DNA of 64,000 nucleotides from Mobula hypostoma (taxonomy: Eukaryota), in NCBI RefSeq assembly GCF_963921235.1, contig NC_086099.1:117180001-117244000 (forward strand), read 5' to 3'. The stretch's first letter is position 1, and each line of letters begins with the position of its first letter. Position numbers and translations under genes: made by a program. Below, piece by piece: positions 12,301-42,400 of the stretch. The notes under the pieces were generated by a model that was given only the letters and a program-made list of their open reading frames with translations, had not been told where the DNA came from and did no database searches.

Positions 12301-15300
12301 GGTATAATCCATTCTTTTTGCACAGATCATACCTTCTCCAGAAGAGATCCCAATGATCCCAAAATCTGAACCCCACCCCCCACACCAATTCTTCAGCCAC
12401 ACATTCATCTGTTAAGTCATCCCAATCTTTCTCTCACTGGCACATGGCACAGGCAGCAATCCAGAGATTACTAGCCTGGATGTCCTGCTTTTCAGCTTTC
12501 AACGTAACGCCCTGAATGCTCTCTTCAGGACCTCCTCCCTTTTCCAACCTATGTTACTGGTGCCAGTACCTACTATGAATTTCAGCTGCTCTGTCTTGCT
12601 CTTTAGAATGCTATGGACTCAACTCTTGACCCTGGTACCCAGGAGGCAACATTTCATCTGGGAGTCTCTTTCACGTCTACAGAATCTTCTGACTACTCCT
12701 CTAACTATAGAACCCCTATCACTACTACACACGTCTTCTTCCCCCTCACGTTTTGAACCAGAGCCAGACTCAGTGCGAGAGACCTGACTGCTTTGGCTTT
12801 CTTCTGCTATGTCATCCCTCCCAAAAGTGTCCGAAGCAGTATACCCATTGTTGAGGGTAATGGCCACAGGGCTACTCTGCCTTGGCTGCCTATTCCATTT
12901 CCTCCTCTTGACAGTCACCCAGTTGCCTGTGTAATCTGTATGTAACTGTGTACCTTGGGTGTAACTACCTCTCTGTATGTCCCCTCTATTAACCCCTCAG
13001 CACCTTGAACAGTCTGGAGTTCATCCAGTTCCAATTCCTTGACATTGCCTGTTAGAAGCTGCAGCTGGATGGCTAGGATACTAGATGGCTAGAGCTAAAT
13101 GAGAAGGAAAGGGGAATACATGTTTAAAAATGGGGTGATAATGACAGCGAGTGCCTGTATGAGGCATAGAGAGAGAAAATACACCTCAAGGAGAACTGGG
13201 AATGAATGTAGTGTGTACTGCCAACAAAGAAGAGGTATAGATTCTCTGCAAGGGAAGTGTTGTAGGGCGAGTTTTGTTTAAGGAACATGGTCGAAAAAAT
13301 AGATATGACTGGAGGATTGGTGGGCTTTTCATTTACCTCAGAGATCTAGGCATCAAGAGACCACTATTAATTGCCCCATCTAATTCTCCTTGAGGAAGTG
13401 CAAGTGAGTTTTTTTCCTCAGTGCCACTGAACAGAGAGTTCAAGGATTAAGCCCCGGTAATGTAGAAGGACCAGGGATTCATTTCTAAATCAGGTTTGTG
13501 ACAAACTTAAGTGGAGCTGCAGATAATGTTCAAATGCAACTGCTTGACGATGTATCAACATCTCCATTCCTGACTCCGTGATGGAATAAAGGTAACTGAT
13601 GAAGCAGTTAAAGTTGCCTATGCCCAGGACACTGTCCTGCATCACACACAGCAGGGCAGGCAGCATCTATGGAAAAGAGCAAACAGATGACATTCTGGGC
13701 TGAGCCCCTATGAAGGGTCTAGGCTCAAAATGACGACTGTCACTCTTTTCCACAGATGCTCCGACCTGTTGAGTTCCTCCTGCACTTTGTGTGTATGTTG
13801 CTCTGGATTTCCAGCGTCTGCAGATTTTCTCGTATTTCTGTTCTTTGTTTGCATATAGGGTTTTCGATCTAAAACATCAAACACTACCTGAGTGCCTTCG
13901 ACAATTCTGTTTACTTCTGTAATCTCTGAAATTTGGAAGAACAAGGATATCTCATAGAAATTTGCTAATTTCTTAAGGTTCTACAGGCTACCTTTACGAA
14001 TGATGTCTTTCTGAAGATTCAAATTTCACTTATTAAATCTATTGATTACAGATCAGTAACATAGTTAAAGGAATGGTAAATTTGCTTTGTGTAGCACATT
14101 CTTGACTGTACCACCACTGGCTTCAACATCAAAACATTCCTTTTAGATCATCTCCCTCCAATGAGCTGTTAACTCATAAGTAGTGACAGCGATTGAGAAT
14201 TGACAAACTCTTGACCATTTTCCCCCCAGTTCACCTGTACTATAGAAAACAGGATAATTATCACATTGTTAATGCTGGTGAATGATTGCCACATAAACCT
14301 ATCAGCTGGCAAGTGATGTGTTGTCTAAACTAAGGTGTTGGCTGCTTAGTTTGAATTATGCAACACATTAAATTTTCTGCATATTCTAAGGTTCTGTATG
14401 CTACTTTAATATCTACATACCTGATCCTTTGCCAGCTCACGCAACTTGGGTTGAAGATTTTTCACATGTGGCTGAATTATTTGATTGTATTCATCTCCAA
14501 GCCTCCGCAGACACTGAGCTACCTTGAGAACCTCTTCATCCCCTGCAACACACAAAAAAAACAGAAATGAACAAGAGAAATGAATACATCCTCTCCTCAT
14601 CAAGAAGGGGATTGATTTCAATGTGTTGTGTCAGGAACCAACTTATCACGGCAGTCAATTACTCCAGAATAAGGTAGTATTGCGTATTAAACACAAGAGA
14701 TTCTGTAAATGCTGGAAATCCAAAGCAACAAAGAAAAACACTAGAGGAACTCATTAGGTCAGGCAGCATCTATGAAGGCGAATAAAAAGTCGACATTTCA
14801 AGCCAAGACCCTTCATCATGACTGGAAAAGAAGGGGGCTAGAATCCAAATTGGGGGGGGAGGGGGGAGAAGGGGAAGAAGTATGAGCTAGAAGGTGATAG
14901 GTGATGCCAGATGAGGGGCAAGGTAGCTGGGTGTGGTTGGGGTATGAAGTGAGAAGCTGGGAGGTGATAGGTGGAAAAGGTAAAGGCTGAAGAAGGAATC
15001 TGACAGGAGAGGTTAGTGGACCATAGGAGAAGGGGAAGTGGGGGGGGGGGGGCACCAGGAGGAGGTGATGGGCAGGTAAGAAGGGAAGAGATAAGACTGG
15101 TGCCGGAATGGGGAATGGAAAAGAGAGAAGGGGAGTGGGTGAGAAATTACTGGAAGTTAGAGAAATCAATGTTCATGCCATCACGTTGGAGGCTACCCAG
15201 ATGAAATGAGATGCTTCTGCTTCAGCTGAGTGTAGCCTCATCGTGACAACAGAGGTGGCCATGAACCGAACGGGAATGGAAAGCAGAATTAAAATGGGTG

Positions 15301-18300
15301 GTCAGACACATGGGAAATCCTTCCTGTTGTGGCAGATCTGGTCTTTATATGATTGCAGACCCATGAATACTTTAGCCTTGCCTTTATCAGTCTTTATAAA
15401 ATTGATAACAATACAGCAGTTTACTTGGACTTCCAGAAGGCTTTTGACAAGGTATCCCACAAGAGGTTAATAATCAAATTACAGGAGGTAGAGATTCAGG
15501 GTAAGGTGTGCAAATGGGTGCTGAATTGACTTAAAAACAAAAAAAACAAATTATGGTGAGAGCATCATTTTCACACCTGGATGATGTTAAAAGTGGGGTT
15601 CTGCAGGGATTAGTTTTGGGGCCGGTGCTTTTTTTTTAAATTTGGATAAGCACATAACAAATAAACAAATAAAGTTTGCAATGACACAAAATTAGAGGAA
15701 TGGGCGGACAACATTCAGGCAGCAGAATCAATACAGTTAGATCTAAACAAAATCAGGATGTGGGCAGATGAAATTTAATCTAAGTAAATGTAAAGTATTA
15801 CATATTGGAAGTAGAAACATTAAATATAAATATACAATGGGGGGGGGGCTTTGAGTTAGAAAGAAGGATTTGGAAGTCCTGATAGACTCATCACCATCAA
15901 CGTTTAGACAATGCACAGAAGCAATCAGGAAGGCTAACAGAATATTGGACTACATAATGCACTCAGTGGAGGTCAAGTCTAGAAACTATCTCCTTAAGCT
16001 GTATAATGTGTTTGTGAGGCCACACCTTGAGTAGTTTGTACAATTTTGGTCTCCGTATTGTGAGGGACGTGAAGGCACTGGAGAGTGTTCAGAGAAGGGC
16101 GACTGGACTCTTCCCAGGTCTGCAGGGTATGTGTTATAAAGAAAGAATGAAATCTTTTTAGCCCAAGTAGACATAGAATGAGAGGAGACAAGACAGAAGT
16201 GTTCAAAATCATTGAGGGTGAAAGTAAGGTGGATGCCAGCTGCTAGTTCAACATTAATCCATCATCAAGGACACAGGGCCATAGGTGGAGACTGGTTAAA
16301 CGGAGATTTCAGACTAACATCAGGAAGCATTCCACTACCGGGCGAGTTGTGGACACATGGTACAACTATCTAGTTGTGTAGTTGAGGGTAGTAACTTAGA
16401 GACTTTCAAATCTAAAGCAGAATGGGTGGGATCCTTCATGATGTTAATGGCCCTTTCTCGACACCTTTCAGTATAAACGTCCCTGATGACGGGTGGGCTG
16501 ATGTCAGTGATGCGTTAGCATAGAGCCTTCCTGTTTGCCGCAGTACAATTTCCATATCATGCAGTGATGCACGGTATGGAAACTACAACACTTCTGTAGA
16601 ATGACATGAGTAAAGATGTACATAGTCCAGCTCTTTTTAGCCTGCTGAGAAAGTAGAGGAGCTGGTGACCTTTCCTGACTGTGTAGGATGTGTTCTGGGA
16701 CCACGAGAGGTTGCACAAGATGTGCGCTCTTTGGAATCTGAAACTGCTCGCAGTTATCACTGTTGTAGAGAAGGATGTGAGTGGTGAGAGTTCTCCTGAA
16801 GTTGGTCATTAACTCCTTTGTCTTGTTGACATTGAGGAAGAGATTATTTGTCTGGTATCAGATCTCAAACTCTTCCACCTCATCTCTGTAGGCCATCTCA
16901 TCATTGTCAGTGATGAGCTGCATAGTCATGGCTGAGCAGAGTGTACACCAATGGGCTACACAACCGAATAAAAGATAACAAATATTTTGCCTTTAAGAAC
17001 CACAGCAAAGAAAAACCCTGGGAACTGTTGGCCAATAGTTAGGTAAGTTAGAATTTTGATGAATAAATTGCAACTGGGTAGTCAGCATGGATTTGTGCAT
17101 GATAGATCATGTCTTACAAACTTGATTCTGTTTGATGAAGTGAGCACAAAATTTAGGGCTGGCAGGACAATAGATTTGATTTATGAGATTTAACAAGGCC
17201 TTTGGTAAGGTTCCATATGTTAAGCTGCTGTTGGTTAGAAGATATAAAACTCAGGGAGAGTTGCTTAATGGATACACAATGGCTTGTCAGCAAAAAACAG
17301 AGGTGATAGTGTTTCTCAAACTGAAGGACCGTGATTAGCGCATATCTTGCATCAGTGTTGGACCCATTGTTACTTGTCATCTATATCAAAGATGTCGATG
17401 AGAATATACAAGTCACGAATAGAAAGTTTGCAGATGATGGAAGTATAGGTGGAATAATTAAGGCGGAGAGGTGGAGAAACATCTCTGCCAAAGGAGGTCA
17501 AGATGTTCCTCCCCTCCGCTAGCCTGCAGATCACCCTTGGGAAAGGTGTAGGCACTTGCTTAGCCCCCCGATCAGGTTCATATGAAGCAAGTGGTGGATA
17601 GTCATATGAGTAGCTGGTACATAACACAATTCCTGGTTATGTGACCACTGATACCAGGCAAACAATCTCTGAAGACTATGATTATGGCTGGTGGCCACCA
17701 TCTTGTAAAAACATTACCCAGAAGAAGGCAATGGCAAACCACTTCTGTAGAAATATTTACCAAGAACAGTCAAGGTTATCTACATCATACAACATGGGGC
17801 ATAATGATGATGATAACAGACAATGAAGATTATCAAACCTACAGGAGGATCTTGAGCAACACACACAGAAGTTCCTGGTGAACACAGCAGGCCAGGCAGC
17901 AGCTCTAGGAAGAGGTACAGTCGACATTTCGGGCCGAGACCCTTCATCAGGACTAACTGAAAGAAGAGCTAGTAAGAGATTTGAAAGTGGGAGGGGGAGG
18001 GGGAGATCCAAAATGATAAGAGAAGAAAGGAGGGGGAGGGATGGAGCCGAGAGCTGGACAGGTGATTGGCAAAAGGGATATGAGAGGATCACGGAACAGG
18101 AGGCCCAGGGAGAAAGACGGGGGGGGGGGACCCAGAGGATGGGGGCAAGGGGTATAGTCAGAGGGAGAAAAAGGAGACAGAGAAAAAAAGAATCTGTATA
18201 TAAATAAATAAATAATGGATGGGGGTACAAGGGGGCATCAGCGGAAGTTAGAGAAGTCAATGTTCATGCCATCAGGTTGGAGGCTACCCAGATGGAATAT

Positions 18301-21300
18301 AAGGTGTTGTTCCTCCAACCTGAGTGTGGCTTCATCTTTACAGTAGAGGAGGCCATGGATAGACATATCAGAATGGGAATGGGACGTGGAATTAAAATGT
18401 GTGGCCACTGGAAGATCCTGCTTTCTCTGGCGGACAGAGCGTAGGTGTTCAGCGAAACAATCACCCAGTCTGCATCGGGTCTTGCCAATATATAGAAAGC
18501 CACACCGGGAGCACCGGATGCAGTATATCACCCCAGCCGACTCACAAGTGAAGTGTCGCCTCACCTGGAAGGACTGTCTGGGGCCCTGAATGGTGGTAAG
18601 GGAGCAAGTGTAAGGGCATGTGTAGCACTTGTTCCGCTTACAAGGATAAGTGCCAGGAGGGAGATCAGTGGGGAGGGATGGGGGGTTGGGGACAAATGGA
18701 CAAGGGAGTCGCATAGGGAGCAATCCCTGCGGAAGGGGGGGGGGAGGGAAAGATGTGCTTAGTGCTGGAGGTGGCGGAAGTTACGGAGAATTATATGTTG
18801 GACCCGGAAGCTGGTGGGGTGGTTAGTGAGGACAAGTGAACCCTATTCCTATTCCTAGTGGGGTGGCGGGAGGATGGAGTGACAGCAGATGTACGTGAAA
18901 TGGGGGAGATGTGTTTGAGAGCAGAGTTGATGATGGAGGAAGGGAAGCCCCTTTCTTTAAAAAAGGACATCTCCTTCGTCCTGGAATGAAAAGCCTCATC
19001 CTGAGAGCAGATGCGGCGGAGATGGAGGAATTGTGAGAAGGGGATCGCATTTTTGCAAGAGATAGGGTGAGAAGAGGAATAGTCCAGATAGCTGTGAGAG
19101 TCAGTAGGCTTATTGTAGACATCAGTGGATAAGCTGTCTCCAGAGATAGAGACAGAAAGATCTAGAAAGGGGAGGGAGGTGTCGGAAATGGACCAGGTAA
19201 ACTTGAGGGCAGGGTGAAAGTTGGAGGCAAAGTTAATGAAGTCAACGAGCTCAGCATGCGTGCAGGAAGCAGCACAAATGCAGTTGTCCATGTAGCAAAG
19301 GAAAAGTGGGGGACAGATACCAGAATAGGATTGGAACATAGATTGTTCCACAAAGCCAACAAAAAGGCAGGCATAGGTAGGACCCATACGGGTGCCCATA
19401 GCTACACCTTTAGTTTGGAGGAAGTGGGAGGAGCCAAAGGAGAAATTATTAAGAGTAAGGACTAATTCCGCTAGATGGAGCAGAGTGGTGGTAGAGGGGA
19501 AATGATTAGGTCTGGAATCCAAAAAGCAGAGAGCTTTGAGACCTTCCTGATGGGGGATGGAAGTATATAGGGACTGGACATCCATGGTGAAAATAAAATC
19601 ATTGAAAAGTTTCAGAGCGTGAGAAATGTCACGAACATAGGTAGGAAGGGATTGAACAAGGGGGGATAAAACAGAGGTATGCAGAAATAAGTTCAGTGGG
19701 GCAGGAGCAAGCTGAGACAATGGGTCTACCTGGACAGGCAGGTTTGTGGATCTTGGGTAGGAGATAGAAATGGGAAGTGCAGGGTGTGGGATCTTGCTCT
19801 TGATCAGCTGAGTAAGTGGACCAAGGAATGGTAAATAGAGTCTTCTGGTAAGATGATGATATGCTCTGCCTCAGTGGCCTGTCCGGGTCCAACCAAAGGG
19901 GGATGCTTTGTCTTGCATGTCTTTCTTTTTTTTCCCCCACAATCACAAAAGACTCTGCTAGATACTAAGAACATCAAGTACTGCAGGACTTTCCCATCAC
20001 CGAGCTGCTTGATACAAGGATGGAGCTGGACTTGGGTATCATTGCTGTGTTGTCATCTGGACTTCTCGTGTACCTTTGGATGGTGCATGGTGCAAGTGAC
20101 TGTCTTGGACATTTTTATTGTGATCGCAAGACCCTGTTTTACATTAGTAATAGAATACAAGTCCAGTTCAGTGGTTCATTCATGAGACTGACGGCAGGGG
20201 GGAGCTGCATTCCCTTGTTTGTAGCAAAGACAAGGCCCACGCTGTCGAGTCACCTGTTGTAGCCAACCAGGAGAGGTGGCACAGAGGCAGTGTGGTAAAG
20301 CCTCGGTGGGCTACACTGGGTTGTGAGCTGGCCCCTCCCATCTCTGCTAAGCATCATCCCCCACCCACCGGTGTTCGCTCAGTGGACAGACAGGCTAATC
20401 CAGGCCAATTTAACATGAATTCTACAGTCGAACCATTCAGAGACTTAGACTATATATGTTTTCCTTGGTTCTGNNNNNNNNNNNNNNNNNNNNNNNNNNN
20501 NNNNNNNNNNNNNNNNNNNNNNNNNNNNNNNNNNNNNNNNNNNNNNNNNNNNNNNNNNNNNNNNNNNNNNNNNNNNNNNNNNNNNNNNNNNNNNNNNNNN
20601 NNNNNNNNNNNNNNNNNNNNNNNNNNNNNNNNNNNNNNNNNNNNNNNNNNNNNNNNNNNNNNNNNNNNNNNNNNNNNNNNNNNNNNNNNNNNNNNNNNNN
20701 NNNNNNNNNNNNNNNNNNNNNNNNNNNNNNNNNNNNNNNNNNNNNNNNNNNNNNNNNNNNNNNNNNNNNNNNNNNNNNNNNNNNNNNNNNNNNNNNNNNN
20801 NNNNNNNNNNNNNNNNNNNNNNNNNNNNNNNNNNNNNNNNNNNNNNNNNNNNNNNNNNNNNNNNNNNNNNNNNNNNNNNNNNNNNNNNNNNNNNNNNNNN
20901 NNNNNNNNNNNNNNNNNNNNNNNNNNNNNNNGGTTTCAGATGCCCAAGACACACCGTACGAATAGCACACCAAATGAGCTTGTCATGATGGCGTCCCAGC
21001 GACTCCACCAGGAGTTAAGGGCGCAGACGGACACACACACGGACACACACACACACCCCACCATATATACTCCGGGCAGTCTGCTACATGCTTTGCAGCT
21101 TGGCCCTGGAGGGCGCTGTTTCATGTGGCTGTATTCATGTTGAACTTGAACTTAATTCTGATAAGTACAAGATGCTGCATTTTGAAAGGTTAAACCTAGG
21201 CAAGATTTTCACAGTGAATGGCAAGGCCCTAGGAGTGCTGTACAACAGAATGAGTAAGAAGAATGTTTATAGTTCACTGAAAGTGGAGTCACAGATAGAG

Positions 21301-24300
21301 AAAAAACACAGATACTGCCCGACTTGCTGAGTTCCTAAAGTGTTTTGTGCGCGTTGTTACAGATTGCAGCTTTTGGGATGGTGGCCGTCAGAAGCTTGAG
21401 CATTAAGTATAAGATTTGGGAAGCCATGGTGCAGTGTACGAGATGCTGGCAAGACTGACTGGGAGTACCGTGTTCTGTCTTGGCTGCCTTGCTATAGAAA
21501 AGATGTTATTAAGCTGGAAAGAGTGCTGAAAAGGTTTACTCCAGCAGGACTTATGAACAGTCGACTTTATTCCTTGGAGTACAGGAGATCCTACAAAGTT
21601 GTACAAAATCATGAGGGGCATAGATAGAATGAAAGCACTCGCTCCTCCCTCCAAGGCTGGGGAATTAAGAACTAGAGGGCGTAGGGTTAAGGTGAGAGAG
21701 GAAAGATTTAAGAGAAATTTGTGGTGTACCTTTTTATTTACAAAAAGAGCGGCAGCTACGTGGTATCAGCTGCCAGAGGAAGTGGCTGAGGTAGCTACAA
21801 TGACTTGTGAAAGACACTTGCACAACTACATGGAATGGAAAAGGTTAGAAGCTTACGGGCCAAACCACTGGGGTTAGCATGGATGTGGCTGCTCGCTTCC
21901 ATGGGCCAGCTGGGCTGCAGGCGCAGATCTGTGTGTCTACTGTAAACATCCACATCACATCTATGCAAATAAAAACAGCACAGTCTCTCCCAGGTCCATT
22001 GTATAAAGGAAGGAAGGAGTTGCTTAGAAAAGTGCAACGTTCAGTAATTATATTTTCCATTTTGTAGACCAACTCAAACTTGAGGTAGCATTTGAAGATC
22101 TTTAAGATCTGAAGTGCATTGCTTCAACATAGAGTATAACAAACTTCTTCTTGAAAGCAGGAATGGCTGCACAAATCAAAACTTGCCTGTTCTCAAGAAA
22201 TAGTGACACCACAATCTACTGCATCCTAGTCAGGAACTTGCGCAGTTATTCCTAGCCACATATACAGGGTACAATAAGGACACAAGAAACGCAGCGGCCA
22301 TTTGGTCCCCTTGAGCCTGCTGCACTATTTGACACACTTTATCTCATTTTCACATACTTGCCTGGTTCCTATAATTCGCCAATTTCCCCAAAAACGAGAT
22401 GTCCATCAATCTTGGTCTTCAATGTTCTGGGTAGAAAATTGAGGATTCACAGCTTTTTAACAGAAGTGCTTCTTCATTTCAATTTTAAAGAGGGTGCACC
22501 TTATCCTGAGACCTCAATTCCAAATTCTCCAGGAAGCAAGTATCCTCTCAATATTAACCTTTCAAGATGGGCAGTATCTTAAAGAAAAGCTGGAAATTCT
22601 GGAAATACAATCGTCCCTCGGCATCCGCGGGGGATTGGTTCCAGGGCACCCGCGNNNNNNNNNNNNNNNNNNNNNNNNNNNNNNNNNNNNNNNNNNNNNN
22701 NNNNNNNNNNNNNNNNNNNNNNNNNNNNNNNNNNNNNNNNNNNNNNNNNNNNNNNNNNNNNNNNNNNNNNNNNNNNNNNNNNNNNNNNNNNNNNNNNNNN
22801 NNNNNNNNNNNNNNNNNNNNNNNNNNNNNNNNNNNNNNNNNNNNNNNNNNNNNNNNNNNNNNNNNTCTTCTGGGAACGCTGATGCTGCCTCGTCATCAGC
22901 CGATGCCAATTCTCCTGTGATCTTTAGGTTCTTGAGGCTGTAGCACTTTACATAGCTAGCCAGCCATCCCTTACTAGCCTTAAACTCCTTCCTCTCGCTC
23001 ACAAGTAGCGAGGCGAACAACACTCAAACAATGAGTGCTGGAGAGAGACTGAGGATCTGTGAAATGGTGGGAGGCTACAGCAAGGTATGCCTACACATCA
23101 CTTCATTCGCGTGGATTCAGCGTAGTGCTCAGCGCGCGGCAAATTCAAGTTTTGCTTTTTGGAACTTCCTGGAATTTTTTGTCGATATTTTCGATCCGCA
23201 GTTGGTTGAATCCGTGGATGCGGAGGACCATCTGTAGTTAGATCATGAAGCAATTGTAAACAGAGAGAAGCAGTTCCAGCATTTTCTGTTTTATTTCAGA
23301 TCTGCATCATCTGCTATTCGTTTCGCTTTATCTTCAGGATCTTACATGTTCAGCAATATCATTTATTATTTTTCTGAACTCCTGCAGAGTGCAAGCTCAA
23401 GGTAACCTTGATCTCATGAAAAATCTCGAAGACCATCATATTCTTCCTTAAATACAGAGGCCAACAATATCACCAAATTCTTGTGGAGCTGTGCCAAAAG
23501 GTACCTATTGATAAGCATTCCATTCCTCTTGCAAAAAAGGCCAATATGCCAGTCTTTTAATAAATACCTGAATTTTAATTTTAATGCTTGTGCGACCAAG
23601 ATCTCCGCTAACATCAGCTGTTAATAGGCTTACAATGTGCGCCCTCGATTTCCTATTTTTTGATTTGTATTCATTGTGTATAAACAACATTTCGCACCCC
23701 TGTAAATTCCTCACTTTTAGTTCGGATTCAGCTTCAGCTATTTTTTTGTGCATACTTATGGGAATTCCTTCAACTGTCTTTTATTTCTTCCTCAGCTATC
23801 ACATTTTTAGCCTAGTTTCTCATTACATCTGCTCCTTTTAAGTTTTTTCCCCCAATACTTTGCTGGTTTCTAAAGTTTTTCTAATCTTTAAGCATGCCAT
23901 TGTTATTCACAAAATAATTCAGCCTTTTCTTTCTTTCTAACACTACTCTTAACGCCTTTAGTTAGGCACTTCTTTCTTGTTAATATTTATGAAATATTAA
24001 ACATTGCTGTTGGTCATCTACTGTCACACACTTTAATTTAAAGTCCCTGCCCACCTTAGTCAACACTCAATATGACAAAACTTTTATCGTCAACTCTCTG
24101 TAGTCTAAAAGTGGTTCATCTTATTTCTGGCCCACTCATATCGCATGAAAGTTAATCCTGTCCTCAGTACAGATTAGTTAAGTGCCATCAAGTCGTTGAC
24201 TCATGGCGACCCTATGGATAGTTGCCCTAAATGGGTTTCGATACACGCAAAGGCAGCTCATCGGAGATCACGTTGCAATAAAGCTGTCCTTATTGTGTCC

Positions 24301-27271
24301 ATCCGATTGGTGGCCTTCCTTTCTTCTGTTGTCCTTCCACCATGCTGAGGAGAATATCCTTTTCCAAGGAGCTGTTTCTTCGCATAATATGCCAAAGCAC
24401 AACAGGCGGAGTCCTGTCATTTGGTCCTGCTGAGAGAGACTTGGTTTGATCCTGTTGAGCTGTGGTCCCCAACCTCCGGGCCGCGCACCAATACCGATCT
24501 GCGAAGCATGCAGTGGTGCAGCGGTAGCCGGAACACACCCAGTACATCTTTAAGAAAAAAGCCGAAATAAACAAGCTAATTAATTAGGTGTCACCTCTGA
24601 TCTGGGCGGCACCTAATTAATTAAAAATGCATACACGAGGGAATCTGCAAATGCCGGAAATTCAAGCAACACACACAAAAAATGCTGGTGAACGCAGCAG
24701 GCCAGGCAGCATCTATAGGAAGAGGCCCGAAACGTCAACTGTACCTCTTCCTATAGATGCTGCCTGGCCTGCTGCGTTCACCAGCATTTTTTGTGTGTAT
24801 TACCTAATCAATTAGCTTGTTTATTTCGGCTTTTTACTTAAGGATGTGCTGGGTGTGCTCCGGATACTGCTGCACCGCTGCATTCTTCGCGGATTGGTAT
24901 CGGTCCGCGGCCCGGAGGTTGGGGACCCCTGTTGTTGAGGACTGATTGTTCTGAGAGAGGTCCACAAGATGTGTGATATTTTTCTCTAGCACCACATTTC
25001 AAAGGCATCGATACACTTCCTATCCTCCTCCTTTCCCAACCATATAATGTCATTGAGAACACTATGACCTGCATAAGTAAAATCTTTGTACGTAGAGATA
25101 GATTCTTGTTCCTGCAGATCTTCTCTCAATCCTTAATGGCTACTCTGCCAAGAGTGATCCTTCGTTGGATTTCCTGACTGCTTACCACTTTGGTATTAAT
25201 CATTGATCCAAGTTGAAACTTTCACCACTTCAATTTGCTCTCCATCGAGATTGAAATTGGTTGTGCTGCCAGTAGTCATAACCTTAGACTTCCTTGAGTT
25301 AAGGTACACGTTCAGATCATCTGACTCCATGCCAATTCATATTTGGCACAAATAGGAGTCTAGGTTATTGGGCTGTTTGCTCTGCTTTGGAACTTGTCCC
25401 TTCACTCTGCCTGAAAAGCTGTCTTATTTCTTTGTTATTACTTGCACGAAACTGCAGCTATGAAGAGACGATCCCATCTGAAGCTGAAACAAATTCAAGA
25501 GAAGACGTATGTGACTTTGAGATGTTCAGGTTCCACATGTCAAATATGATCACAGTGCAATTAGAGTACTACACTGGCATGGATTGAGACTGGTTAAAGA
25601 ACAGTAAAGAGGAGGAAGAAAGTAATCATATTCAGTTGGAAGACTATGACTAGGTATTTGACAAAGAGATGAGTGCTGGAACTTCAGGTGTGCACAACCT
25701 ACATCAATGATTTCCATGAGATAAGTTAAAAATTTTGCTGATGATTGAAACCTGGGTCCCAGTGTGGATTGCATGGATTAAAGGTTAGCTGAAAACACAC
25801 AATCAAATGTGTCTTTTGTGTTAAATCAGATTAGCAAAGATTTGCAGGGCAGCCATCAAGTGTCACAATGCTTCCAGCGCCAACATAATTAGCCCACAAC
25901 TAACCTTAACCATCTATGGAATTGTAGGAGGAAACCAGGGCACCCGGAGGAACACCCCATGGACAAGGAGCAGGTGCCAACAGGAAATGAAACCCAATTG
26001 GCGATCGCTGGTGCTGTAAAGTGATGCTCTAAGAGGTACAGTGAACAAATAAGGACATAGCAGGTGAAATATAAAGTAGAAAAAAGCAGCGTATCATTAA
26101 ACAGTGAGAGATTTAAAGGTGTCCACACACAATCACTTAAAGTTAACCTGTAGGTACTGAAAGAAATGAGGAAGGAGCACAATATCTTGGTTATCCTTAT
26201 TGTAAATAGATTTTTGAACAAGAGATATTACTGGAATTTTAACAAGACCGAGTGAAGCCACACTGTACAGCCCTGGTCTCCCTACCCAAGGAAGATGGGT
26301 GCAACCAAAGGTTTATTGGATCAATTCTTGTAATGGGGGAATTGTTCAGTAAGGAGAGTGTTGGTGGAGAGACCCGTACTCTCCTGAATTTAGCAGATAT
26401 AAGCAAACTGTTTCCCAATTGATATATTCCCAGTGCAGCGAAACAAAGCACAAGCCATTCAGGCCTGAGAAAAGAAAATCCTTCACTTACATGGAGCTTG
26501 TAATTCCCTACCTCAGCAGTGCGCACATTCACGACAGACCTTGACAAATTTTTAATTATTAAGGAAATCAAAGGAATACACGGTACACGCAGGAAAGTGG
26601 CGGAGGTTTATTACTGCCTTTGTATGGTTCCATTTAACACCTGGGAATCCAGACTACCTTCAGGGGAATCCAGGGATAAGGGAAAGCAGTGGGATGTTTC
26701 AAAGGTAATCATAATGAACGGCACGAGGAGGGAAAACGGTTGACTCCTGCTTTCATTATTAATCTTATAACAATTCTATTCATGCTCTCCCTCTCTCGCT
26801 GACCCCCAAAGATTTTTAAACTAGATGGGCAACAGAGCCTTCAAACCTCCTGCTCCATCATCTTCACTTCCTCCACATTCCCAAGTATGGCGACACCTCC
26901 TCCCATTACAGACCCTCTTCCACCACCCCACACAGTCCCTCCTCCTACGATAGCCGCCCTCATCCCCCTCCAAACGACAAGGTCCCTCCCCTATCATAGC
27001 CCCTCTTCCTCCAGCCCACCACACGGAATCCATCCCCCTCACAGCATCCCCTTTCTTCATCGCACACCTCTCTCCCACCACAGCCCCTCAGAGACACACA
27101 CACACCACCGCCCGCCCAACTTCCCCCACCCACAGCAATGGAGGCCGCTCAAACGCCCTTCCCGCCAGGCCCCAGGTGCCTCCAACCTGGGTCGCCACAG
27201 TCCGTCTCCAGGAAGTCCTGCTCCAGCAAGTGCTCCACGATGAGCGCGACCTGCTCACTCAGTTCCCGCAT
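3312..27271 (-). CDS. Gene B: second BCL2L15/BFK-like paralog, 4 coding exons (27271-27187, 14542-14421, 3841-3617, 3320-3312), 146 aa
   Basis: Hand-spliced protein: [82 protein letters not shown]...[18 protein letters not shown]. Same exon phases as gene A and the same AKDQ|A junction. BH3 is LRRLGD, BH2 is WIQSSGGW, and there is no TM segment. Confidence 0.85.
3617..3841 (-). CDS. Gene B coding exon 3 (225 nt, ends in BH2 GGW)
   Basis: Acceptor tttttacaag|; encodes ASEVFSG...[11 protein letters not shown]; donor TGG|GTAAGC. Confidence 0.9.
4325..6035 (-). mobile_element. 5'-truncated degenerate CR1 LINE (RT half)
   Basis: Fragmented ORFs [28 protein letters not shown]; CR1-type 3' tail near 4325. 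Confidence 0.92.
7040..9898 (+). mobile_element. Young 5'-truncated CR1/HER1-type LINE with uninterrupted ORF2 (APE endonuclease + RT)
   Basis: 919 open codons containing [32 protein letters not shown] and KFADD; 3' UTR ending in (tttctatg)n. Confidence 0.97.
10523..10838. repeat. Two-copy ~158-bp tandem duplication inside the old CR1
   Basis: ctataatttcc...ggagtgtagt repeated at 10523 and 10681 with few mismatches. Confidence 0.9.
14421..14542 (-). CDS. Gene B coding exon 2 (BH3 exon, 122 nt)
   Basis: Acceptor tttttgtgtgttgcag|; encodes [20 protein letters not shown]...LAKDQ; donor CAG|GTATGT. Confidence 0.9.
14700..15330 (-). mobile_element. Penelope-like element terminal fragment (degenerate hammerhead motif, GIY-YIG C-terminus)
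   Basis: Homologous to 17858-18430; atgatga-agggtcttggctt-gaaa-tg-tc at ~14820-14790. Confidence 0.8.
15400..17460. mobile_element. Degenerate CR1 fragments (+) and a Rex1/Babar fragment (-, ~16420-16960)
   Basis: Remnants of [15 protein letters not shown] and RPHLE; the Rex1-like remnant is [20 protein letters not shown]. Confidence 0.7.
17858..19790 (-). mobile_element. Penelope-like retroelement (RT + GIY-YIG endonuclease + terminal repeat), decayed
   Basis: RT motifs [17 protein letters not shown] and FLDL; GIY-YIG motif [18 protein letters not shown]. Confidence 0.93.
17918..17955 (-). ncRNA. Minimal type-I hammerhead ribozyme motif of the Penelope terminal repeat
   Basis: tagtc-CTGATGA-a-gggtctcggccc-GAAA-tg-TC-gactg: catalytic core boxes, stem I (agtc/gact), stem II, and a minimal stem III. 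Confidence 0.7.
20474..20931. other. Assembly gap
   Basis: N run. Confidence 1.
21140..21910 (+). mobile_element. CR1 3' fragment (probable continuation of the CR1 split at ~17460-17860)
   Basis: Remnants LHFERLN and [10 protein letters not shown]. Confidence 0.75.
22608..23234 (-). mobile_element. Tigger/pogo DNA transposon deletion derivative (contains N gap 22655-22865)
   Basis: TA flanks; TIR-like ends caatcgtccctc...gaggaccatctg; transposase remnant FKASKGWL...[10 protein letters not shown]. Confidence 0.85.
24460..24931. mobile_element. hAT/Charlie-type MITE with ~130-bp imperfect TIRs and an 8-bp TSD
   Basis: Ends ctgtggtccccaacc ... ggttggggacccctg; TSD ctgttgag/ttgttgag. Confidence 0.88.
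24624..24801. mobile_element. Penelope-terminus-derived hairpin inserted in the MITE
   Basis: Perfect 55-bp inverted arms at 24671-24725 and 24744-24798; flanked by acctaattaatta/acctaatcaatta. Confidence 0.85.
27187..27271 (-). CDS. Gene B coding exon 1 (85 nt, phase-1 end)
   Basis: ATG at 27271 (context actATGC); [16 protein letters not shown] aligns with gene [15 protein letters not shown]; donor CAG|GTTGGA gives the phase exon 2 needs; abuts a CpG island. Confidence 0.75.
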
Positions 27272-36400: not shown

Positions 36401-39400
36401 ATATCTCTTGTCAACCATGGTTCCTTCACCCTACCACCCTTTCCCTTCCTCATTCAGACAAACCTATACAGGACTGCATGCAGAGAGCCCACTGACACTC
36501 ACTCCTCCTGGTATTCACTTCTGTTGCCGTGCGTGCCTCCACATTTACAGAATCTGCCATGTACCTTCCTGATCTACACTCTTTCTCATTCCTTCTCTGA
36601 TGTTTACACTGTCACATGCACATTCTGCATTGCTTCAGTCTTATGTAACCAGTCTCCTTGATCTATCATATGTGCACCCTCTCCTATGAAAACTCCTCTC
36701 CATTCACTCGTGTCCACACCCATTCATAAACCCAGCTGCTTTAATTGACCCCTCTCCTCATTCCAATTCTTTTCAGAATTAATACTCTTCATGCCCATAT
36801 GCACTGATTCTCGCACAATTTTCTCAGCTGAACAACCTGCTCGTTTAATCCTCTGATGCATACATCCTTCCTGTGCATTCATACTGTATAATCTGGATGA
36901 TGAGTGACCCAGAGCACGTGCAGGCCCTTCCTCTCTGCATTAGTTGCCAAAAGCCTTTCTTCCTGTGTTCATTTTAGCTCAGCTGTATTTCACCTGGATA
37001 CAATGTTGAAAGTGAGGAACTTTCCTTCAGAGATTCAAGAGACAACCATATTTAATGGAGTTAAGTATTGAAGTCAAGTAACATTTGATTACCAAAAATG
37101 TTACCACTCGTCCAGTCCTAAAGAAGGGTGCTGGCCTAAAACGTGAACTGTTTATTAATGTCCATAAGGCTATATCATTTGGCCCATCAAGTCTGCTCTG
37201 CCATTTCATCATGAGTGACCCATTTCTCCTCTCCTACCTTCTTCCTGTATTCCTTCATGCCTGACCAATCAAAATCTATCAATCTTTGCCTTAAATATAC
37301 GGAAAGACTTGGCCTCCACAGCTCTCTGTGGCAAAGAATTCCACAGATTCACCACTCTCTGACTGAAGAAATCCCTGCTCATTTCCATTTTAAAAGGACA
37401 CCCCTTTATTTCAAGGCTGCGTCCTCTTGTCTTAGGCTCTCCCACCACAGGTAACATCCACTCTAGCAAGGCCTTTCACCATTCAATGGGTTTCAATTAG
37501 GTCTCCGCACATTCTTCTGAATATAGGCCCAGAGCCATCAAACGCTTTTCATATGATAAATCATTCAATCCTGGAATAATTTTTATGAACCTCCAGTTTC
37601 AGCACATTGTTAATTTCTATAAATGCTATCTGACCTGCCTAATTTCCTTAGCATTTTGGGTCTGTTGCTTTGGATTTCCAGCATCTGCAGAATCTCAGGT
37701 TTTTGTTACCAATGTCTATCTGAATGTTGCAAATAACTTGGATGTGATCAGTGACCCCATTAACGAAGGTGGAGAATCCCTCATTTTTTCATCACTTACC
37801 CATCCATTCGAATTGCTCACCCAGCTTATGAGCTTTGTATCAATAAATGTTTTCAAGGCAGCCCCAATTTCTTCAATTAGGCTTGGCATCTGTTTCATAG
37901 TTTGCATTCCCAATGAAGCTGAGATCTTCAGCAGATTTTCTTCAACTGCAAGTTCCTTCCCACTGGACCAGTTCTGGAAGATTCTGTTCACTGTGCTGGA
38001 AAATAGCTCACATGCCTTTGGAGTAAGTGAGAGACAGGGGGTTCACTTAAAAGATGGCTCAGTGTTTTTACCTTCCTTTTACAGTTCTATACCTCTGAAT
38101 AACCCTTTGCCATCTTTATTCAGCTTTAACCTCAATCCTGCAACCTTCTTCAACCCCATCAGGCCATAGGGCCTTAAGACTTATGAGCAGAATTAGGCCA
38201 CTCATCCTATTGAGGGTGTTCTGCCATTCAACTAACCCTGTGATGTATTTGACCTTCTACTGTTTGGGCCTTTTAAGTGGCAAGTGGCAGCACTGCCTTT
38301 AGCTGCTAAGGGCTTCAGCTCTGAAATCCTTCTGTCATCTCTGACCCCTTTGCATTTCAGCAGGAGATTGTGGGTTGAAGCCTCACTCAAGAAACTTCAG
38401 CATTAAAGTCTATGCTGATATGCTGAAAAATAACAACCACAGCTTTATAGCTAATCAACAATTTTGGAATTGTAGTCATTGTAGTAATGCAGGAAATATG
38501 AAGTCAATTTTCCCCCATAAAGACACAAGAATAATACCAATGTCCAGATAATTTATGTCAGTGGTGTTTAGTGCTTGATATTGGGATTCCTGAGATATAT
38601 AGGTTAGTAGGTTAATTGGTCAGAAGTTGAGATGTAGTGTTCAAGTTGTGTAAGGTGTTGGTGAGGCCTAATTTGAAGACATATGTGCAGTCCTATCTGC
38701 AGGAAATATAAGACTGAAAGAGTACAGGATGTTGCAGGGTCTCTCAAGGCCCTGATTTATAGGGAAAGGCTGGATAAGTCAGGACTTTATTCCTTGGGGC
38801 ATTGAAAAACAAGGGAAGATTTGACAGATGTGTTTCAGATTATGAGGGATATTGATAGGGTACATGCAGGCAGGCTTTTTCACGAAGGTTGGGTGATGAG
38901 GCTAGAACTGGAGGTCATAGGTTAAGGGTGAAAGGTGAAATTCTTAAGGGGAACATAAGAGGGAAATTCTTCTCTTAGAGGGAGGGGAGAGTGTGGAACA
39001 AGCTGCCAGTGGAAGTGGTGGTTACGGGTTTGATTTCAGCATTTAAGAGAAATTGGGAGAAGTATATGAATGGAGGGGTATGGAGGCCTACAGTATGGGT
39101 GCAGGTCGATGGGACTAGACACAGTCTAGAGGGGCCAAAGGGCCTGTTTCTCTGCTGTAATGCTGTATGACAATGCCATTATGATGTGGGTGTAATTGGG
39201 TGGCACGAGTTCATTGGGCCTGTTACCCTGCAGTACTTCTACATAAATAAAAATATCAATATAACACTGTTATTAAAGATATTGTAGCAGGGAATTTCAA
39301 AAAAAGCCAAGATAATCAGGCAAAGTCAGAAAGATCTTGAGAAAGGAAAATCATGTTCGACCAATGTATTAGAGGTCTGAAGAAATGTCGTGCTATAGAT

Positions 39401-42400
39401 ATAGATAAGATGCATTATATACAGAAGGCATTTTTGAAAATGCAGAAAATCGAAGCTCATAGTGTAGGTGATTGCTTTGCTGGGTCGAGAGTAAGGGCAC
39501 CCCTTGCTTAATGGTATTGGTCTATGCCATTAAAAAGGCTGGGGGCACCCTGTCTAGAGGATTGGCTAGCAAACAAGAAATAAAGGGTAGAGTCTGATGA
39601 ATCTTTATTTTTATGGTAGGTTTAATGTAACCAGTGAATGCCAGAAAGATTAATGCTTGAATTTTTACAATATAGATAAATAACTTGATGGTGTATTTAA
39701 TATTTCAGAAATATTTGAGTAATATTGGAAATATATTGTTTGATTAAGCATTCTTTGTTTAAATAATTCATTAAGGGTTATACATAAAAGTACGTGAATG
39801 ACATACATCATTACGCCACTATGTCATATGTTTGTGCCTCATTAAAGTAAAACAAAACTAAACACATGCACCCCAGACTCACGTGTATTTTTTTCGATTA
39901 GTTTATGTTTTGGAGTTACAAACCATAACAAAAATATAAATGGGTGAGTTAGTAAGTTTGCAGATGATACAAAGGTCGGTGGTGTAGTGAATAGCATAAA
40001 TGGCTGGCAAAGGATACAGCGGGATTTTAGATTTGTTGCAGGTATAGACAGAGAAATAGCAGATGGAATTTAACCTGACCAAATGTTAAGTATTGCACCT
40101 TGGTGGGTCAAAGGTAAAGAGACTTGTTAAAGGCAAGACTCTAAATGTGAGCAGAGAGATCTTGTGGTCCAAGTTCATAGCTCCACGAAAGTTGCTGCGC
40201 AGTTTGACGGAGTAGTTAAGATGGTACATGAGATTAGTTGACATATTGAATTCAGAAGTCAAGAATTTATGTTTCAGCTTTATAAAACCCTAGTTAGGCT
40301 GCATCTGGAGTATTGCATGCAGTTCAGGTCATCCTATTTCAGGAAGGATGTCGAGGCTTTGGAAAAGGTACCTGGATTAGAGGGCATGTGCTATAATGAG
40401 AGGTTGGACAAACTTGGGTTATTTTCTCTGAAGCAGCACAGGCTGCGGGGAGATCTGATAAGGGTTTATAGAATTATGGCAGGTATAAATAGAGGAGACA
40501 GACAGTATCTTTTTCTCAGGGTTGAAATGTCTAATACCAGAGGCATGCATTTAAGGCAAGAGGGGGTAGTTTTAAAGGAGATATGAGCGGCAAGTTTTTA
40601 AACAGAGCATGGCAGGTGCCTGGAGTGAGTTGCCCAGGTGGTAGTAGGATGAGATACAGTACATTCGGGACTTTAAGAGATGTTTGGACAGGCACATGAA
40701 TGTGAGGAAAATGGTAGGGTGTGGACACTGTGCAGGCAGGCAGAAGGGATTTGTTCACTTGGCCATTTCATTAGTTATTGGTTGGACACAACATTGTGGG
40801 CCAAAGGGCCTGTGCCTGTGTGCTGTATCGTCCCCTGTTCTAAATTTGCTGACAATTCAAAGTTAGGTCAGAAAGTAAGTTGTGAGGGGGCATTCAGGGG
40901 TTACAAATGGACATATAGATAGGTTAAATGAATGGGCAAAGATCCAGAAATTGGAGTGTAAAGTGGATAAATGTAGAAATGTCCATTTTGATAGGAAACA
41001 TTTAAGAGAAACATATAATTTAAATAATGAGATTATAGTACACAGCAATATGAAGGGGTCTAAGTGATCCATTTGTGAAAAGTTGGTGTGCAGGTGCAGC
41101 AAATAATTAGGAAAGCCAACAGAATATTGTTGTTTATTATGAGGGAAAAGACTTAAAAGAAGGGAGGTAGTGCTTCATTTAAGAGACATTGGTGAGACCA
41201 TGTGTGGAATATGGTGTATAGAGTATCGAAGAATTTGCCAGAAACAATTGAGAAACAAAATGTTTACCAGATTCAACCTTGAAAGGGCAGGCTGTATTAT
41301 GAGGAAAGGTCAAAATGGCTCAATTTGCATAATTGGTGTGTAGAAGCTTGAGAGGGGTTTAGTGGAATCATGTAAGATCCTGTGAGATCTTAACAGGGTG
41401 GATGTGCAGAGGATATTCCTCTGGGAATATCTAGAGCCAGATGTTGCCTTTAAAAATAAAGATTCATGAAAACTGAGAAGAGTCAATAGTTTGTTTTCAA
41501 AGTGTGTGAGTCTTCAGAACTTTGTTCCTTAGAATGCAGTCTTTGAATATTATTTAAGACAGAGGTGGATAGATATTAGGGAAAGAAGGAAGCTGTGAGG
41601 GAAGTTAAGGCTGCATGGATCAGCCATGATTATGGGAATGGCAGAGCTGTCTTGAGGAGCCAAGTAATGAAATCCTGCTCCTAATTCATACGTCAATGTG
41701 CTAACATGATTGGGGAGTAATATTGGCTAATATTTGGGGAAACCTCTATGAATAGCTGTGTGAGATCTATAACCATTTGTGACGGCAGACCAATATCGCT
41801 AACAAACCATCAGGACATGGGAACGAGGTGTGAGCTTACAGTCTTCTGACTGATCAGACACTTGCCATCCAGAGAGTTTGCTAGAATTCTGCTCAGTCCA
41901 TACACTCCACATGCTCAAGATGTCCTCAAAGGCATTGTAGACTCCATTTTAACTCAATTGCAGTACTTCTGACAGGATTGCATCGTGTCATAGAGTCACC
42001 CAAAATCTTTTTCTTGGGAAAAGGTATCAACTTGGCTAATGGTAAAGTTTGTTCACCTACCTGGTCCTTTGCATGGTTTGCTATGAGTGTTTGAAATTCA
42101 TTTGAGAAGGAATTCAAGTGCTCCTGGTTTATCAGGTCTCCCATCTCCCGCAGTCTGTGTGCTAAGGATTTGATCGCCTGCTTTTCTAAATCACAGAATA
42201 AAAATCAAAATAAACACAAAGGCTATAAATCTGAAATAAAATTGAATGTGTTGAAGTACTCAGCAGGTCAGACAGCATCTGTGGAGAGAAGCAGAGAAGA
42301 CGCAGAGTTATGCATTTGAAAAGATCCCGCATGGTAACCCGATCAAGAAGGTTATGGCGTGTAGAATCCAAAGCAAGCTGGCTAACGGGCTTGATAATAG

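What the first reader, a model, noticed from the sequence alone, without database searches (positions are those of the whole stretch)
27187..27271. Gene B carries a caspase-8-type LETD site just before BH3: a candidate BID-like switch on a BFK scaffold
Seen in the sequence: ...DFLETD|[21 protein letters not shown], so cleavage would remove helix 1 and leave the BH3 helix near the new N-terminus. Established: (I/L)ETD is the caspase-8 preference; BID is activated at LQTD|G in the pre-BH3 loop; human BFK has an effector-caspase DEVD site in this loop. Inference: paralog B was rewired, or retains an ancestral wiring, from an effector-caspase amplifier to a death-receptor/initiator-caspase (or granzyme) substrate. 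That would give a second BID-like link to the mitochondrial pathway.
Basis: partly seen in the sequence, partly recalled or inferred. Interest (0 to 1): 0.8.

Follow-up and report, generated by a model that had tools for sequence, protein, structure and literature searches.

The report
Conserved caspase site in ray BFK paralogue
A devil-ray cell-death gene of the BFK (BCL2L15) family carries an LETD caspase-type cutting site just before its killer (BH3) helix; the site is not a local novelty but an old feature kept for over 400 million years in sharks, rays, bony fishes and caecilians, though nobody has shown that it is cut.

Summary
Window 27271-27187 (minus strand) is exon 1 of a four-exon, 148-aa gene. 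My spliced model is 148/148 identical to the RefSeq protein "apoptosis regulator BAX-like [Mobula hypostoma]". LETD is residues 21-24, and D24|C25 lies in an 11-residue low-confidence linker between helix 1 and the BH3 helix (AlphaFold2). The fold is closest to the human BFK crystal structure 7CCL.

LETD is not a chance motif or a rewiring peculiar to paralogue B. All 13 cartilaginous-fish orthologues keep L-(E/D)-x-D followed by C, G or S at this position, and seven of them have LETD. 35 of 42 bony-fish BCL2L15 proteins have [ILV]ExD[GSC] before BH3, against 2-4% in shuffles. Three caecilians have L(E/Q)SD|S. The aliphatic-P4 site is therefore ancestral, and human DEVD|S is derived. The tandem paralogue A has lost the site in elasmobranchs.

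In BID the aligned site is IEPD75|S76 (the p13, granzyme B site), not LQTD.

Caspase activation of BFK in a BID-like manner is already published for human BFK. Cleavage of the ray protein, and which caspase would do it, are untested.

Verdict: a new variant of a known kind, of moderate interest.

The parts
27187..27271 (-). Gene B exon 1: start codon, helix 1 (pseudo-BH4-like), the LETD site and the first part of the linker; ends in phase 1
   Evidence: identical to the N-terminus of P0084; 64% identical to Rhinoraja exon 1
27200..27211 (-). Codons for L21-E22-T23-D24 (P4-P1 of the candidate caspase site; P1' is C25)
   Evidence: conserved column in A2, A3 and A4
14543..27186 (-). Gene B intron 1 (12.6 kb, phase 1), containing the two N gaps 20474-20931 and 22655-22865
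   Evidence: the orthologous intron is 22 kb in Heptranchias
14421..14542 (-). Gene B exon 2: rest of the linker and the BH3 helix ([13 protein letters not shown]; LRRLGD = 14510-14493)
   Evidence: Pfam BH3 model Bclx_interact E 1e-4; BIM and BID BH3 peptides are the best PDB sequence hits for the orthologue
3617..3841 (-). Gene B exon 3: helices 3-7 and BH2 (WIQSSGGW), ending at the BH2-splitting intron (TGG|gtaagc)
   Evidence: Pfam Bcl-2 E 7.5e-4 and BID E 0.02
15..29 (-). Gene B last exon (EKIL + stop)
   Evidence: pyrimidine-rich acceptor; matches the EKLL/ENLL C-termini of orthologues and the C-terminus of P0084
27250..28250 (.). CpG island / GC-rich minisatellite directly upstream of exon 1 (GC 0.71-0.85, CpG o/e 0.95-0.99): the likely promoter
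   Evidence: Heptranchias also has a GC-rich island at exon 1
52712..52838 (-). Paralogue A exon 1 ([42 protein letters not shown]), with no canonical caspase site (SECD|E)
42061..42185 (-). Paralogue A exon 2 (BH3, LREMGD), with the same phase-1 acceptor as gene B
37800..38015 (-). Paralogue A exon 3 (BH2 variant SNSNGW|gtaagt)

Best explanation
Gene B is one of two tandem BCL2L15 (BFK) paralogues that all sampled cartilaginous fishes carry; the window matches Mobula hypostoma. It encodes a 148-aa Bcl-2-fold protein with a pseudo-BH4 helix 1, an 11-residue acidic linker, a BIM/BID-like BH3 helix and a BH2, but no BH1 and no membrane anchor. The linker holds L21-E22-T23-D24|C25. This is the ray's copy of an ancestral SLE(T/S)D|(G/S/C) site present in the jawed-vertebrate BFK lineage and aligned with IEPD75|S76 of mouse BID.

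The most likely working (inferred, not shown) is as follows. The full-length protein is latent because helix 1 covers the core. A caspase that prefers an aliphatic P4 then cuts after D24. Such caspases are the group III enzymes: caspase-8 or -10 first, with caspase-9 or -6 possible. Helix 1 leaves, and the 124-residue fragment exposes its BH3 only a few residues from the new N-terminus. That fragment engages pro-survival BCL-2 proteins and/or BAX/BAK, as described for human tBFK and tBID.

The site is retained from the ancestor, not rewired. Mammalian DEVD is the derived state, and elasmobranch paralogue A has lost the site.
For: Gene model and identity.

BFK scaffold: the AlphaFold2 model of the window's own protein (pLDDT 84, pTM 0.80) best matches the human BFK crystal structure 7CCL (TM 0.70-0.74; the next best folds reach at most 0.64). 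The Cetorhinus orthologue gives the same result.

Site in a flexible linker: helix 4-16, coil 17-27, BH3 helix from residue 28. Residues 21-30 form the lowest pLDDT block, at 58. In Cetorhinus, residues 21-25 have pLDDT below 50.

Conservation: 13 of 13 B orthologues have P4 Leu and P1 Asp with C, G or S at P1'. LETD is found in Mobula, Pristis, Narcine, Rhinoraja, Cetorhinus, Heptranchias and Heterodontus; LEAD in Pristiophorus; LDVD in four orectolobiforms; LECD in Callorhinchus. The linker around the site varies in length and sequence. The pattern [ILV]ExD[GSC] before BH3 occurs in 9 of 13 B proteins and 35 of 42 bony-fish proteins, against 0.02-0.04 per sequence in shuffles, and never in the rest of these proteins. 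Caecilians have LQSD|S or LESD|S.

Precedent: human BFK has DEVD41|S42 in the same loop, its truncated form is the stronger killer and is BAX/BAK-dependent, and the structure paper proposes a BID-like mechanism (PMC8814693).

BH3 quality: Pfam BIM-BH3 model E 1e-4; BID and BIM BH3 chains are the best PDB sequence hits.
Against: No cleavage, binding or killing data exist for any non-mammalian BFK. No paper on the subject was found in four library searches.

A tetrapeptide does not fix the protease. P2 varies (T, V, A, C) and P3 is Asp in orectolobiforms. LETD-like sites can also be cut by caspase-6, -9, -10 and, less well, caspase-3.

The linker is short: 11 residues, against about 19 in human BFK and about 40 in BID. 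L21 follows helix 1 closely, so access for a caspase is not assured.

P1' is Cys in the ray, which is not a classical preferred residue.

The conserved Leu and Asp could instead serve packing or helix capping.

Exon 1 usage rests on the RefSeq model and on orthology. I saw no transcript reads.
Confidence: 0.55

Rival explanations
1. The site is a real caspase site but works as in human BFK. It would be cut late by executioner caspases (caspase-3/7 or caspase-6) as a feedback amplifier, not by an initiator caspase downstream of death receptors.
For: The only experimental precedent in the family is effector-type cleavage at DEVD41|S42 (PMC8814693). Orectolobiform LDVD|S and several teleost LEVD|S sites carry the P3-P1 pattern that caspase-3/7 like. 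Caspase-6 accepts an aliphatic P4 (established knowledge, not tested here).
Against: P4 is Leu in 13 of 13 B orthologues and aliphatic or aromatic in nearly all bony fishes. It is never Asp, the residue caspase-3/7 require most strongly.
Confidence: 0.2
2. The conserved L-E-x-D is kept for a non-proteolytic reason, such as anchoring the linker to the core, capping the BH3 helix or a binding or phosphorylation motif. On this view gene B is not regulated by cleavage.
For: The linker is only 11 residues and follows helix 1 directly. A loose [ILV]ExD arises in 20% of shuffles of this acidic N-terminus, and a second, non-conserved LEQD|F is present.
Against: The pattern that is conserved is exactly that of a caspase site: acidic P3, invariant P1 Asp, a small P1', and variable P2 and flanks. 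It sits in the lowest-confidence part of the model. The homologous position is a mapped protease site in human BFK. The aligned BID position is where the PDB chain named 'BID p13' begins.
Confidence: 0.15
3. The site is aimed at a granzyme-B-like Asp-specific serine protease delivered by cytotoxic cells, like the aligned IEPD/IEAD site of BID.
For: phmmer aligns the shark LETD|C with mouse BID IEPD75|S76, which is the start of the p13 fragment. Several teleosts have IEPD|G or VEPD|G.
Against: From my own knowledge, not tested here: Asp-specific granzyme B belongs to the tetrapod/mammalian chymase locus and has not been shown in cartilaginous fishes. P4 Leu with P2 Thr fits caspase-8 better than granzyme B, which prefers Ile/Val at P4.
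Confidence: 0.05
4. One reading: paralogue B newly changed from an effector-caspase (DEVD-type) site to a caspase-8-type site.
For: Only the contrast with the human DEVD site.
Against: Aliphatic P4 is found in the chimaera, sharks, rays, 35 of 42 bony fishes and three caecilians. By parsimony it is the ancestral state and DEVD is the derived one.
Confidence: 0.03

Closest known systems
Human BFK / BCL2L15 (crystal structure 7CCL; PMC8814693)
   Same: It has the same fold, being the best structural match at TM 0.70-0.74. The domain plan is the same: pseudo-BH4 helix 1, BH3 and BH2, with no BH1 and no membrane anchor. The intron that splits BH2 after GGW is shared. A caspase-type site lies in the helix-1/BH3 loop at the corresponding place.
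   Different: Sequence identity is only 26-27%. The site is LETD|C (aliphatic P4) instead of DEVD|S. The loop is 11 residues against about 19. The BH3 is much closer to BIM and BID. The gene is one of two tandem paralogues in cartilaginous fishes, and the other one (A) shares the FRSL motif with tetrapod BCL2L15.
BID (mouse 1DDB; p15 and p13 fragments)
   Same: It is a latent Bcl-2-fold protein with an inhibitory N-terminal helix and a protease site before BH3. The Pfam BID model matches B orthologues above its cut-off, at 26-44 bits against a cut-off of 25. Shark sLETD|Csss..NIARcL aligns with BID rIEPD|Sesq..NIARhL.
   Different: BID has a loop of about 40 residues carrying the caspase-8 site LQTD|G, and it has no BH2 tryptophan. 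Gene B has WIQSSGGW and a short loop. Structurally BFK is the closest match, and no BID chain is among the top 50. The aligned BID site is the one known as the granzyme B site, not the caspase-8 site.
Bony-fish and caecilian BCL2L15 (for example Anguilla IETD|C, Osmerus IETD|G, Nothobranchius LEHD|G, Albula LQTD|G, Geotrypetes LESD|S)
   Same: They have the same architecture and the same [aliphatic]-E-x-D|small site 8-17 residues before the BH3 leucine.
   Different: Their BH3 is of the FDPxxIAxKLR type. They are single-copy as far as sampled here. They form a separate clade from cartilaginous-fish A and B in the unrooted tree.

Membership tests
BCL2L15 / BFK | BH3 motif (L-x-x-x-G-D) on helix 2 | tested here: met
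   LRRLGD at 14510-14493; Pfam BH3 model E 1e-4
BCL2L15 / BFK | BH2 (W-x-x-x-G-G-W) split by an intron right after the last Trp | tested here: met
   WIQSSGGW|gtaagc at 3617; the same junction is found in paralogue A and in Heptranchias
BCL2L15 / BFK | No BH1 (NWGR) and no C-terminal membrane anchor | tested here: met
   There is no NWGR anywhere in the six-frame translation. The protein ends EKIL, four residues after GGW.
BCL2L15 / BFK | Bcl-2 fold closest to the BFK structure | tested here: met
   7CCL chains rank 1-3, with TM 0.70-0.74 for the window's protein and 0.74-0.79 for the Cetorhinus orthologue
BCL2L15 / BFK | One-to-one orthology with tetrapod BCL2L15 | tested here: inconclusive
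   The tree has three clades (bony vertebrates, A, B) and no outgroup, so the root is unknown. The FRSL motif links A, not B, to caecilian BCL2L15. Synteny with AP4B1/PTPN22 was not tested.
BID | Match to the Pfam BID model above its gathering score | tested here: met
   B orthologues score 26-44 bits against a cut-off of 25. A orthologues and caecilian BCL2L15 also pass, so the model does not separate BID from BFK.
BID | Long pre-BH3 loop with the caspase-8 site LQTD|G, and a C-terminus without a BH2 Trp | tested here: not met
   The loop is 11 residues and BH2 GGW is present. Only the IEPD75-type position aligns.
Caspase-8 substrates | (I/L)-E-T-D at P4-P1 with a small, uncharged P1' | tested here: met
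   LETD|C. P1' Cys is small but is not among the classically preferred Gly, Ser and Ala.
Caspase-8 substrates | Site in an exposed, flexible segment | tested here: inconclusive
   The model shows coil at 17-27 with the lowest pLDDT block. However, the linker is short and I could not compute solvent exposure from coordinates.
Caspase-8 substrates | Cleavage by caspase-8 demonstrated | not testable with these tools
   This needs recombinant protein and protease.

The most novel reading that the evidence does not exclude
The SLE(T/S)D|small site about 15 residues before the BH3 leucine is the original protease switch of a common BID/BFK ancestor. In cartilaginous fishes the duplicated BFK genes divided the work. 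Paralogue B, with the conserved site and a BIM/BID-like BH3, would be the lineage's main, or only, caspase-8-to-mitochondria link, that is, the functional BID of sharks and rays. Paralogue A lost the switch.
Probability: 0.2. Interest if true: 0.75.

Novelty: new variant of a known kind. Interest (0 to 1): 0.55.

Why it matters
BFK is an orphan BCL-2 family member, and the little that is known of its biology comes from human and mouse cells. These results show that its pre-BH3 protease site is one of the best-conserved features of the protein across jawed vertebrates. They also show that the ancestral form has an aliphatic P4, the initiator-caspase type, rather than the mammalian DEVD. Together this suggests that BFK began as a BID-like sensor of initiator caspases and only later became an effector-caspase amplifier in mammals. 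It also ties the BFK site to the IEPD/IEAD site of BID, which supports a common origin for the two latent BH3 proteins. The idea can be tested directly with recombinant proteins from any of about 60 species. It offers a natural series of P4-P1' variants, and a natural loss of the site in paralogue A.

Tried and rejected
- **Paralogue A exon 1:** searching with gene B exon 1 and with regular expressions for the ECIxNxL helix found nothing. It was found only with orthologue proteins.
- **Exon 3 profile against PDB sequences:** the top hits were BAX, BCL-W and BCL-XL BH2 regions, not BFK. Sequence alone misplaces the family; the fold search settled it.
- **Pfam BID versus Bcl-2 scores:** tried as a way to decide between BID and BFK, and rejected because both A, B and caecilian BCL2L15 pass the BID cut-off.
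- **Tree:** it gives three clades without a root, so I do not claim that A and B are a cartilaginous-fish-specific duplication.
- **Canonical BID in cartilaginous fishes:** the family profile search returned no BID from any species at E up to 10. Notes of this scan and the literature gave nothing, so the question is left open.
- **Orthologue DNA:** there was no record for Rhinoraja, and no DNA was available for Cetorhinus or Mobula because the files are too large. Only Heptranchias was read.
- **Literature on fish or shark BCL2L15 cleavage:** nothing was found.
- **Tetrapod relatives:** the search from the caecilian protein reached only two more caecilians, so the point at which DEVD arose within tetrapods is not dated.
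Full report
**1. What is at the coordinates**

The minus strand of 27187-27271 reads [28 protein letters not shown]. LETD (27211-27200) occurs once in the six-frame translation of the window. The ATG has an A at -3. The exon ends CAG|GTTGGA in phase 1. It lies against a CpG island and GC-rich minisatellite at 27250-28250 (GC up to 0.85, CpG o/e about 0.95-0.99).

Joining the two gives ...[27 protein letters not shown], as reported.

**2. The gene**

Using orthologue proteins I completed the model:
- exon 1: 27271-27187
- exon 2: 14542-14421
- exon 3: 3841-3617, ending WIQSSGGW|gtaagc, the BH2-splitting intron typical of the BCL-2 family
- exon 4: 29-15 (EKIL, then stop)

All introns are GT-AG and the product is 148 aa.

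A later profile search returned P0084, "apoptosis regulator BAX-like [Mobula hypostoma]". It is 148/148 identical to this model. Its gene span on GCA_963921235.1 is 27,257 bp, exactly 27271 to 15. The window therefore matches the lesser devil ray, and the RefSeq annotation uses exon 1.

In Heptranchias perlo (L001) the orthologue has the same phase-1 intron 3-4 codons after LETD and a 22 kb intron 1, with a GC-rich island at exon 1. The two N gaps lie inside intron 1 and were left alone.

A second gene, paralogue A, lies upstream on the same strand, at 52838-52712, 42185-42061 and 38015-37800. It has the same intron phases. A and B are 38% identical over exon 3.

**3. What family**

Single exons give only weak Pfam matches: Bcl-2 at 7.5e-4, BID at 0.02 and a BIM-type BH3 at 1e-4.

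A profile of exon 3 from A and B, searched against 1.84 billion representatives, found 43 proteins. Their source names are "bcl-2-like protein 15", "BID-like" or "BAX-like", and they come from sharks, rays, the chimaera, teleosts and a caecilian.

An AlphaFold2 model of the window's own protein has pLDDT 84 and pTM 0.80. It matches the human BFK crystal structure 7CCL best, at TM 0.70-0.74, ahead of BOK, BCL-XL, BAK and MCL-1 at 0.64 or less. The Cetorhinus orthologue gives TM 0.74-0.79.

The protein has BH3 and BH2, no NWGR and no membrane anchor. The BFK scaffold is therefore confirmed.

The Pfam BID model also passes its cut-off for the full-length B orthologues scanned, but likewise for A and for caecilian BCL2L15, so it does not discriminate.

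The tandem A-B pair is old. Scyliorhinus torazame loci 0011767 and 0011768, and Callorhinchus XP_007899788 and XP_007899789, are neighbouring A and B genes. A maximum-likelihood tree gives three clades (bony vertebrates, A, B), with the window's genes beside Narcine (A) and Rhinoraja (B). The tree has no outgroup, so the order of the splits is open.

**4. Is LETD more than chance?**

On its own, hardly. The N-terminus is very acidic, and a loose [ILV]ExD appears in 20% of shuffles, though an exact LETD appears in only 0.5%. A second such motif, LEQD|F, is present and is not conserved.

Conservation decides the matter. In the aligned column every B orthologue keeps P4 Leu and P1 Asp, followed by C, G or S:

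| Site | Species |
|---|---|
| LETD | Mobula, Pristis, Narcine, Rhinoraja, Cetorhinus, Heptranchias, Heterodontus |
| LEAD | Pristiophorus |
| LDVD | Stegostoma, Rhincodon, Chiloscyllium, Hemiscyllium |
| LECD | Callorhinchus |

The acidic run before the site and the spacer after it differ in length and sequence among species.

The same column in bony-fish BCL2L15 holds IETD, LETD, VETD, LEVD, LEHD, VEPD, IEPD, LQTD and similar tetrapeptides. Counts for [ILV]ExD[GSC] before BH3 are:
- 9 of 13 B proteins
- 35 of 42 bony-fish proteins
- 0.02-0.04 expected per sequence from shuffles
- none in the rest of these proteins

The sequences are related, so these counts are not independent events. They do show positional retention across lineages that split more than 400 million years ago.

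Three caecilians have FR(Q/N/S)L(Q/E)SD|S. Human BFK has DEVD41|S42, five residues before the SFD that begins its BH3 peptide (PMC8814693). Anguilla has IETD seven residues before the same SFD, so the sites correspond.

By parsimony the ancestral site had an aliphatic P4, and the mammalian Asp at P4 is derived. Elasmobranch paralogue A has FRSL followed by no usable Asp site; the window has SECD|E. Callorhinchus A has LEVD|S further upstream.

**5. Where the site sits**

In the model of the window's protein, helix 1 is residues 4-16, residues 17-27 are coil, and the BH3 helix starts at residue 28. Residues 21-30 form the lowest-confidence block, at a mean pLDDT of 58. In the Cetorhinus model, residues 21-25 fall below 50.

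A cut after D24 would remove helix 1 and leave C25-G-D-P-G-D-E-E before the BH3 core.

The BH3 ([13 protein letters not shown]) is close to those of BIM and BID. The best PDB sequence matches of the orthologue's N-terminal part are mouse BID and BIM BH3 chains, although the E-values of 0.1-0.4 are weak because the query is short.

In that search phmmer aligned sLETD|Csss...NIARcL with mouse BID residues 71-103, rIEPD|Sesq...NIARhL. The top hit, chain 2voi_B, is named "BID p13" and begins at that Ser. The BFK site thus corresponds to the BID site that yields p13. From my own knowledge this is the granzyme B site, IEPD in mouse and IEAD in human. It does not correspond to LQTD|G, which lies in BID's longer loop.

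**6. How it most likely works**

What is shown:
- the gene model
- the fold
- the location of the site in the linker
- conservation of the site
- BH3 similarity to BIM and BID

What is taken from the literature for the human protein: cleavage in this loop yields a stronger, BAX/BAK-dependent killer, and the full-length protein is closed and does not bind partners (PMC8814693, citing Ozoren et al. 2009).

What is inferred for the ray:
- The protein is latent.
- A caspase preferring an aliphatic P4 cuts after D24. The candidates are caspase-8 or -10, then caspase-9 or -6.
- Helix 1 dissociates and the BH3 is exposed.

I put about 0.65-0.7 on "functional caspase site" and about 0.35-0.4 on caspase-8 in particular.

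Two side inferences come from established knowledge and were not tested. First, a new N-terminal Cys (ray, basking shark, skate, eel) would be a destabilising residue in the Arg/N-degron pathway, whereas Gly or Ser in other species would not, so fragment lifetime may differ among lineages. Second, the post-cleavage myristoylation known for tBID needs an N-terminal Gly, which the ray lacks.

**7. Against**

- There is no experiment on any non-mammalian BFK.
- The linker is short.
- P2 and P3 vary.
- P1' Cys is unusual.
- The Leu and Asp could have structural roles.
- I saw no transcript reads.
- I could not establish whether cartilaginous fishes also have a canonical BID. The claim of a "second" BID-like link is therefore open in both directions.

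**8. Novelty**

The gene is annotated but uncharacterised. The mechanism class, a caspase-opened latent BH3 protein, is known for BID and proposed for human BFK. Two things appear to be new, since four searches of the paper library found nothing. One is the family-wide conservation of an initiator-type site, its ancestral status and its loss in paralogue A. The other is the alignment of that site with the p13 site of BID.

That makes this a new variant of a known kind, of moderate interest to people working on cell death and its evolution. The "rewired" reading does not, and the "ancestral wiring" reading does.

Noticed in passing
window 27350-28378 (+): A 342-aa ATG ORF with no Pfam match lies wholly inside the GC-rich minisatellite upstream of gene B exon 1. 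It is recorded as a called gene in the public collection, but all six frames are open there, so it is probably spurious. The Pristis pectinata model P0075 carries a 107-aa repetitive N-terminal extension (GGGSRRGARGRVQARSS...), which suggests that a similar repeat sits at the promoter in other batoids.
   Followed up: partly
window 7040-9799 (+) and 48985-50325: A long LINE ORF of 919 aa (endonuclease plus reverse transcriptase, Pfam E 1e-33) lies in gene B intron 2. A copy about 94% identical lies in gene A intron 1, which points to recent activity of this element.
   Followed up: partly
window 3616-3560 (-), just after GGW|gtaagc: Reading through the last donor gives [16 protein letters not shown] and then a stop. 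Similar read-through peptides occur in Heptranchias (VSIMS) and in a Logan contig protein, P0006 (VSTIPNITVMITIE). Either the start of the last intron is conserved or an intron-retaining isoform exists.
   Followed up: no
protein P0002 (Stegostoma tigrinum isoform X2): This is an alternative first exon that replaces helix 1 and the LDVD site with an unrelated 33-residue N-terminus. It would amount to a naturally 'pre-truncated' form of gene B. I did not look for an equivalent exon in the window's intron 1.
   Followed up: no
window 52712-52838 (-), paralogue A exon 1: Paralogue A shares the FR(S/C)L motif with caecilian BCL2L15 (FRSLESD|S) but lacks the Asp site in elasmobranchs. This suggests that A is the closer counterpart of tetrapod BCL2L15 and that the switch was divided unevenly after the duplication.
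   Followed up: partly
window 37516 (-) region: The last exon of paralogue A is not settled. KNVRRPN followed by a stop, after a moderate acceptor, is a candidate by analogy with Chiloscyllium KNVNIE.
   Followed up: no
protein P0080 (Pampus argenteus): This teleost BCL2L15 has the site duplicated in tandem (LETDGLETDG) before BH3.
   Followed up: no
beyond window position 1 (loci): The gene downstream of gene B in Mobula, Cetorhinus and Heptranchias is a 564-aa BTB-BACK-Kelch protein on the opposite strand. This conserved neighbour is useful for a synteny test of BFK against BID.
   Followed up: no
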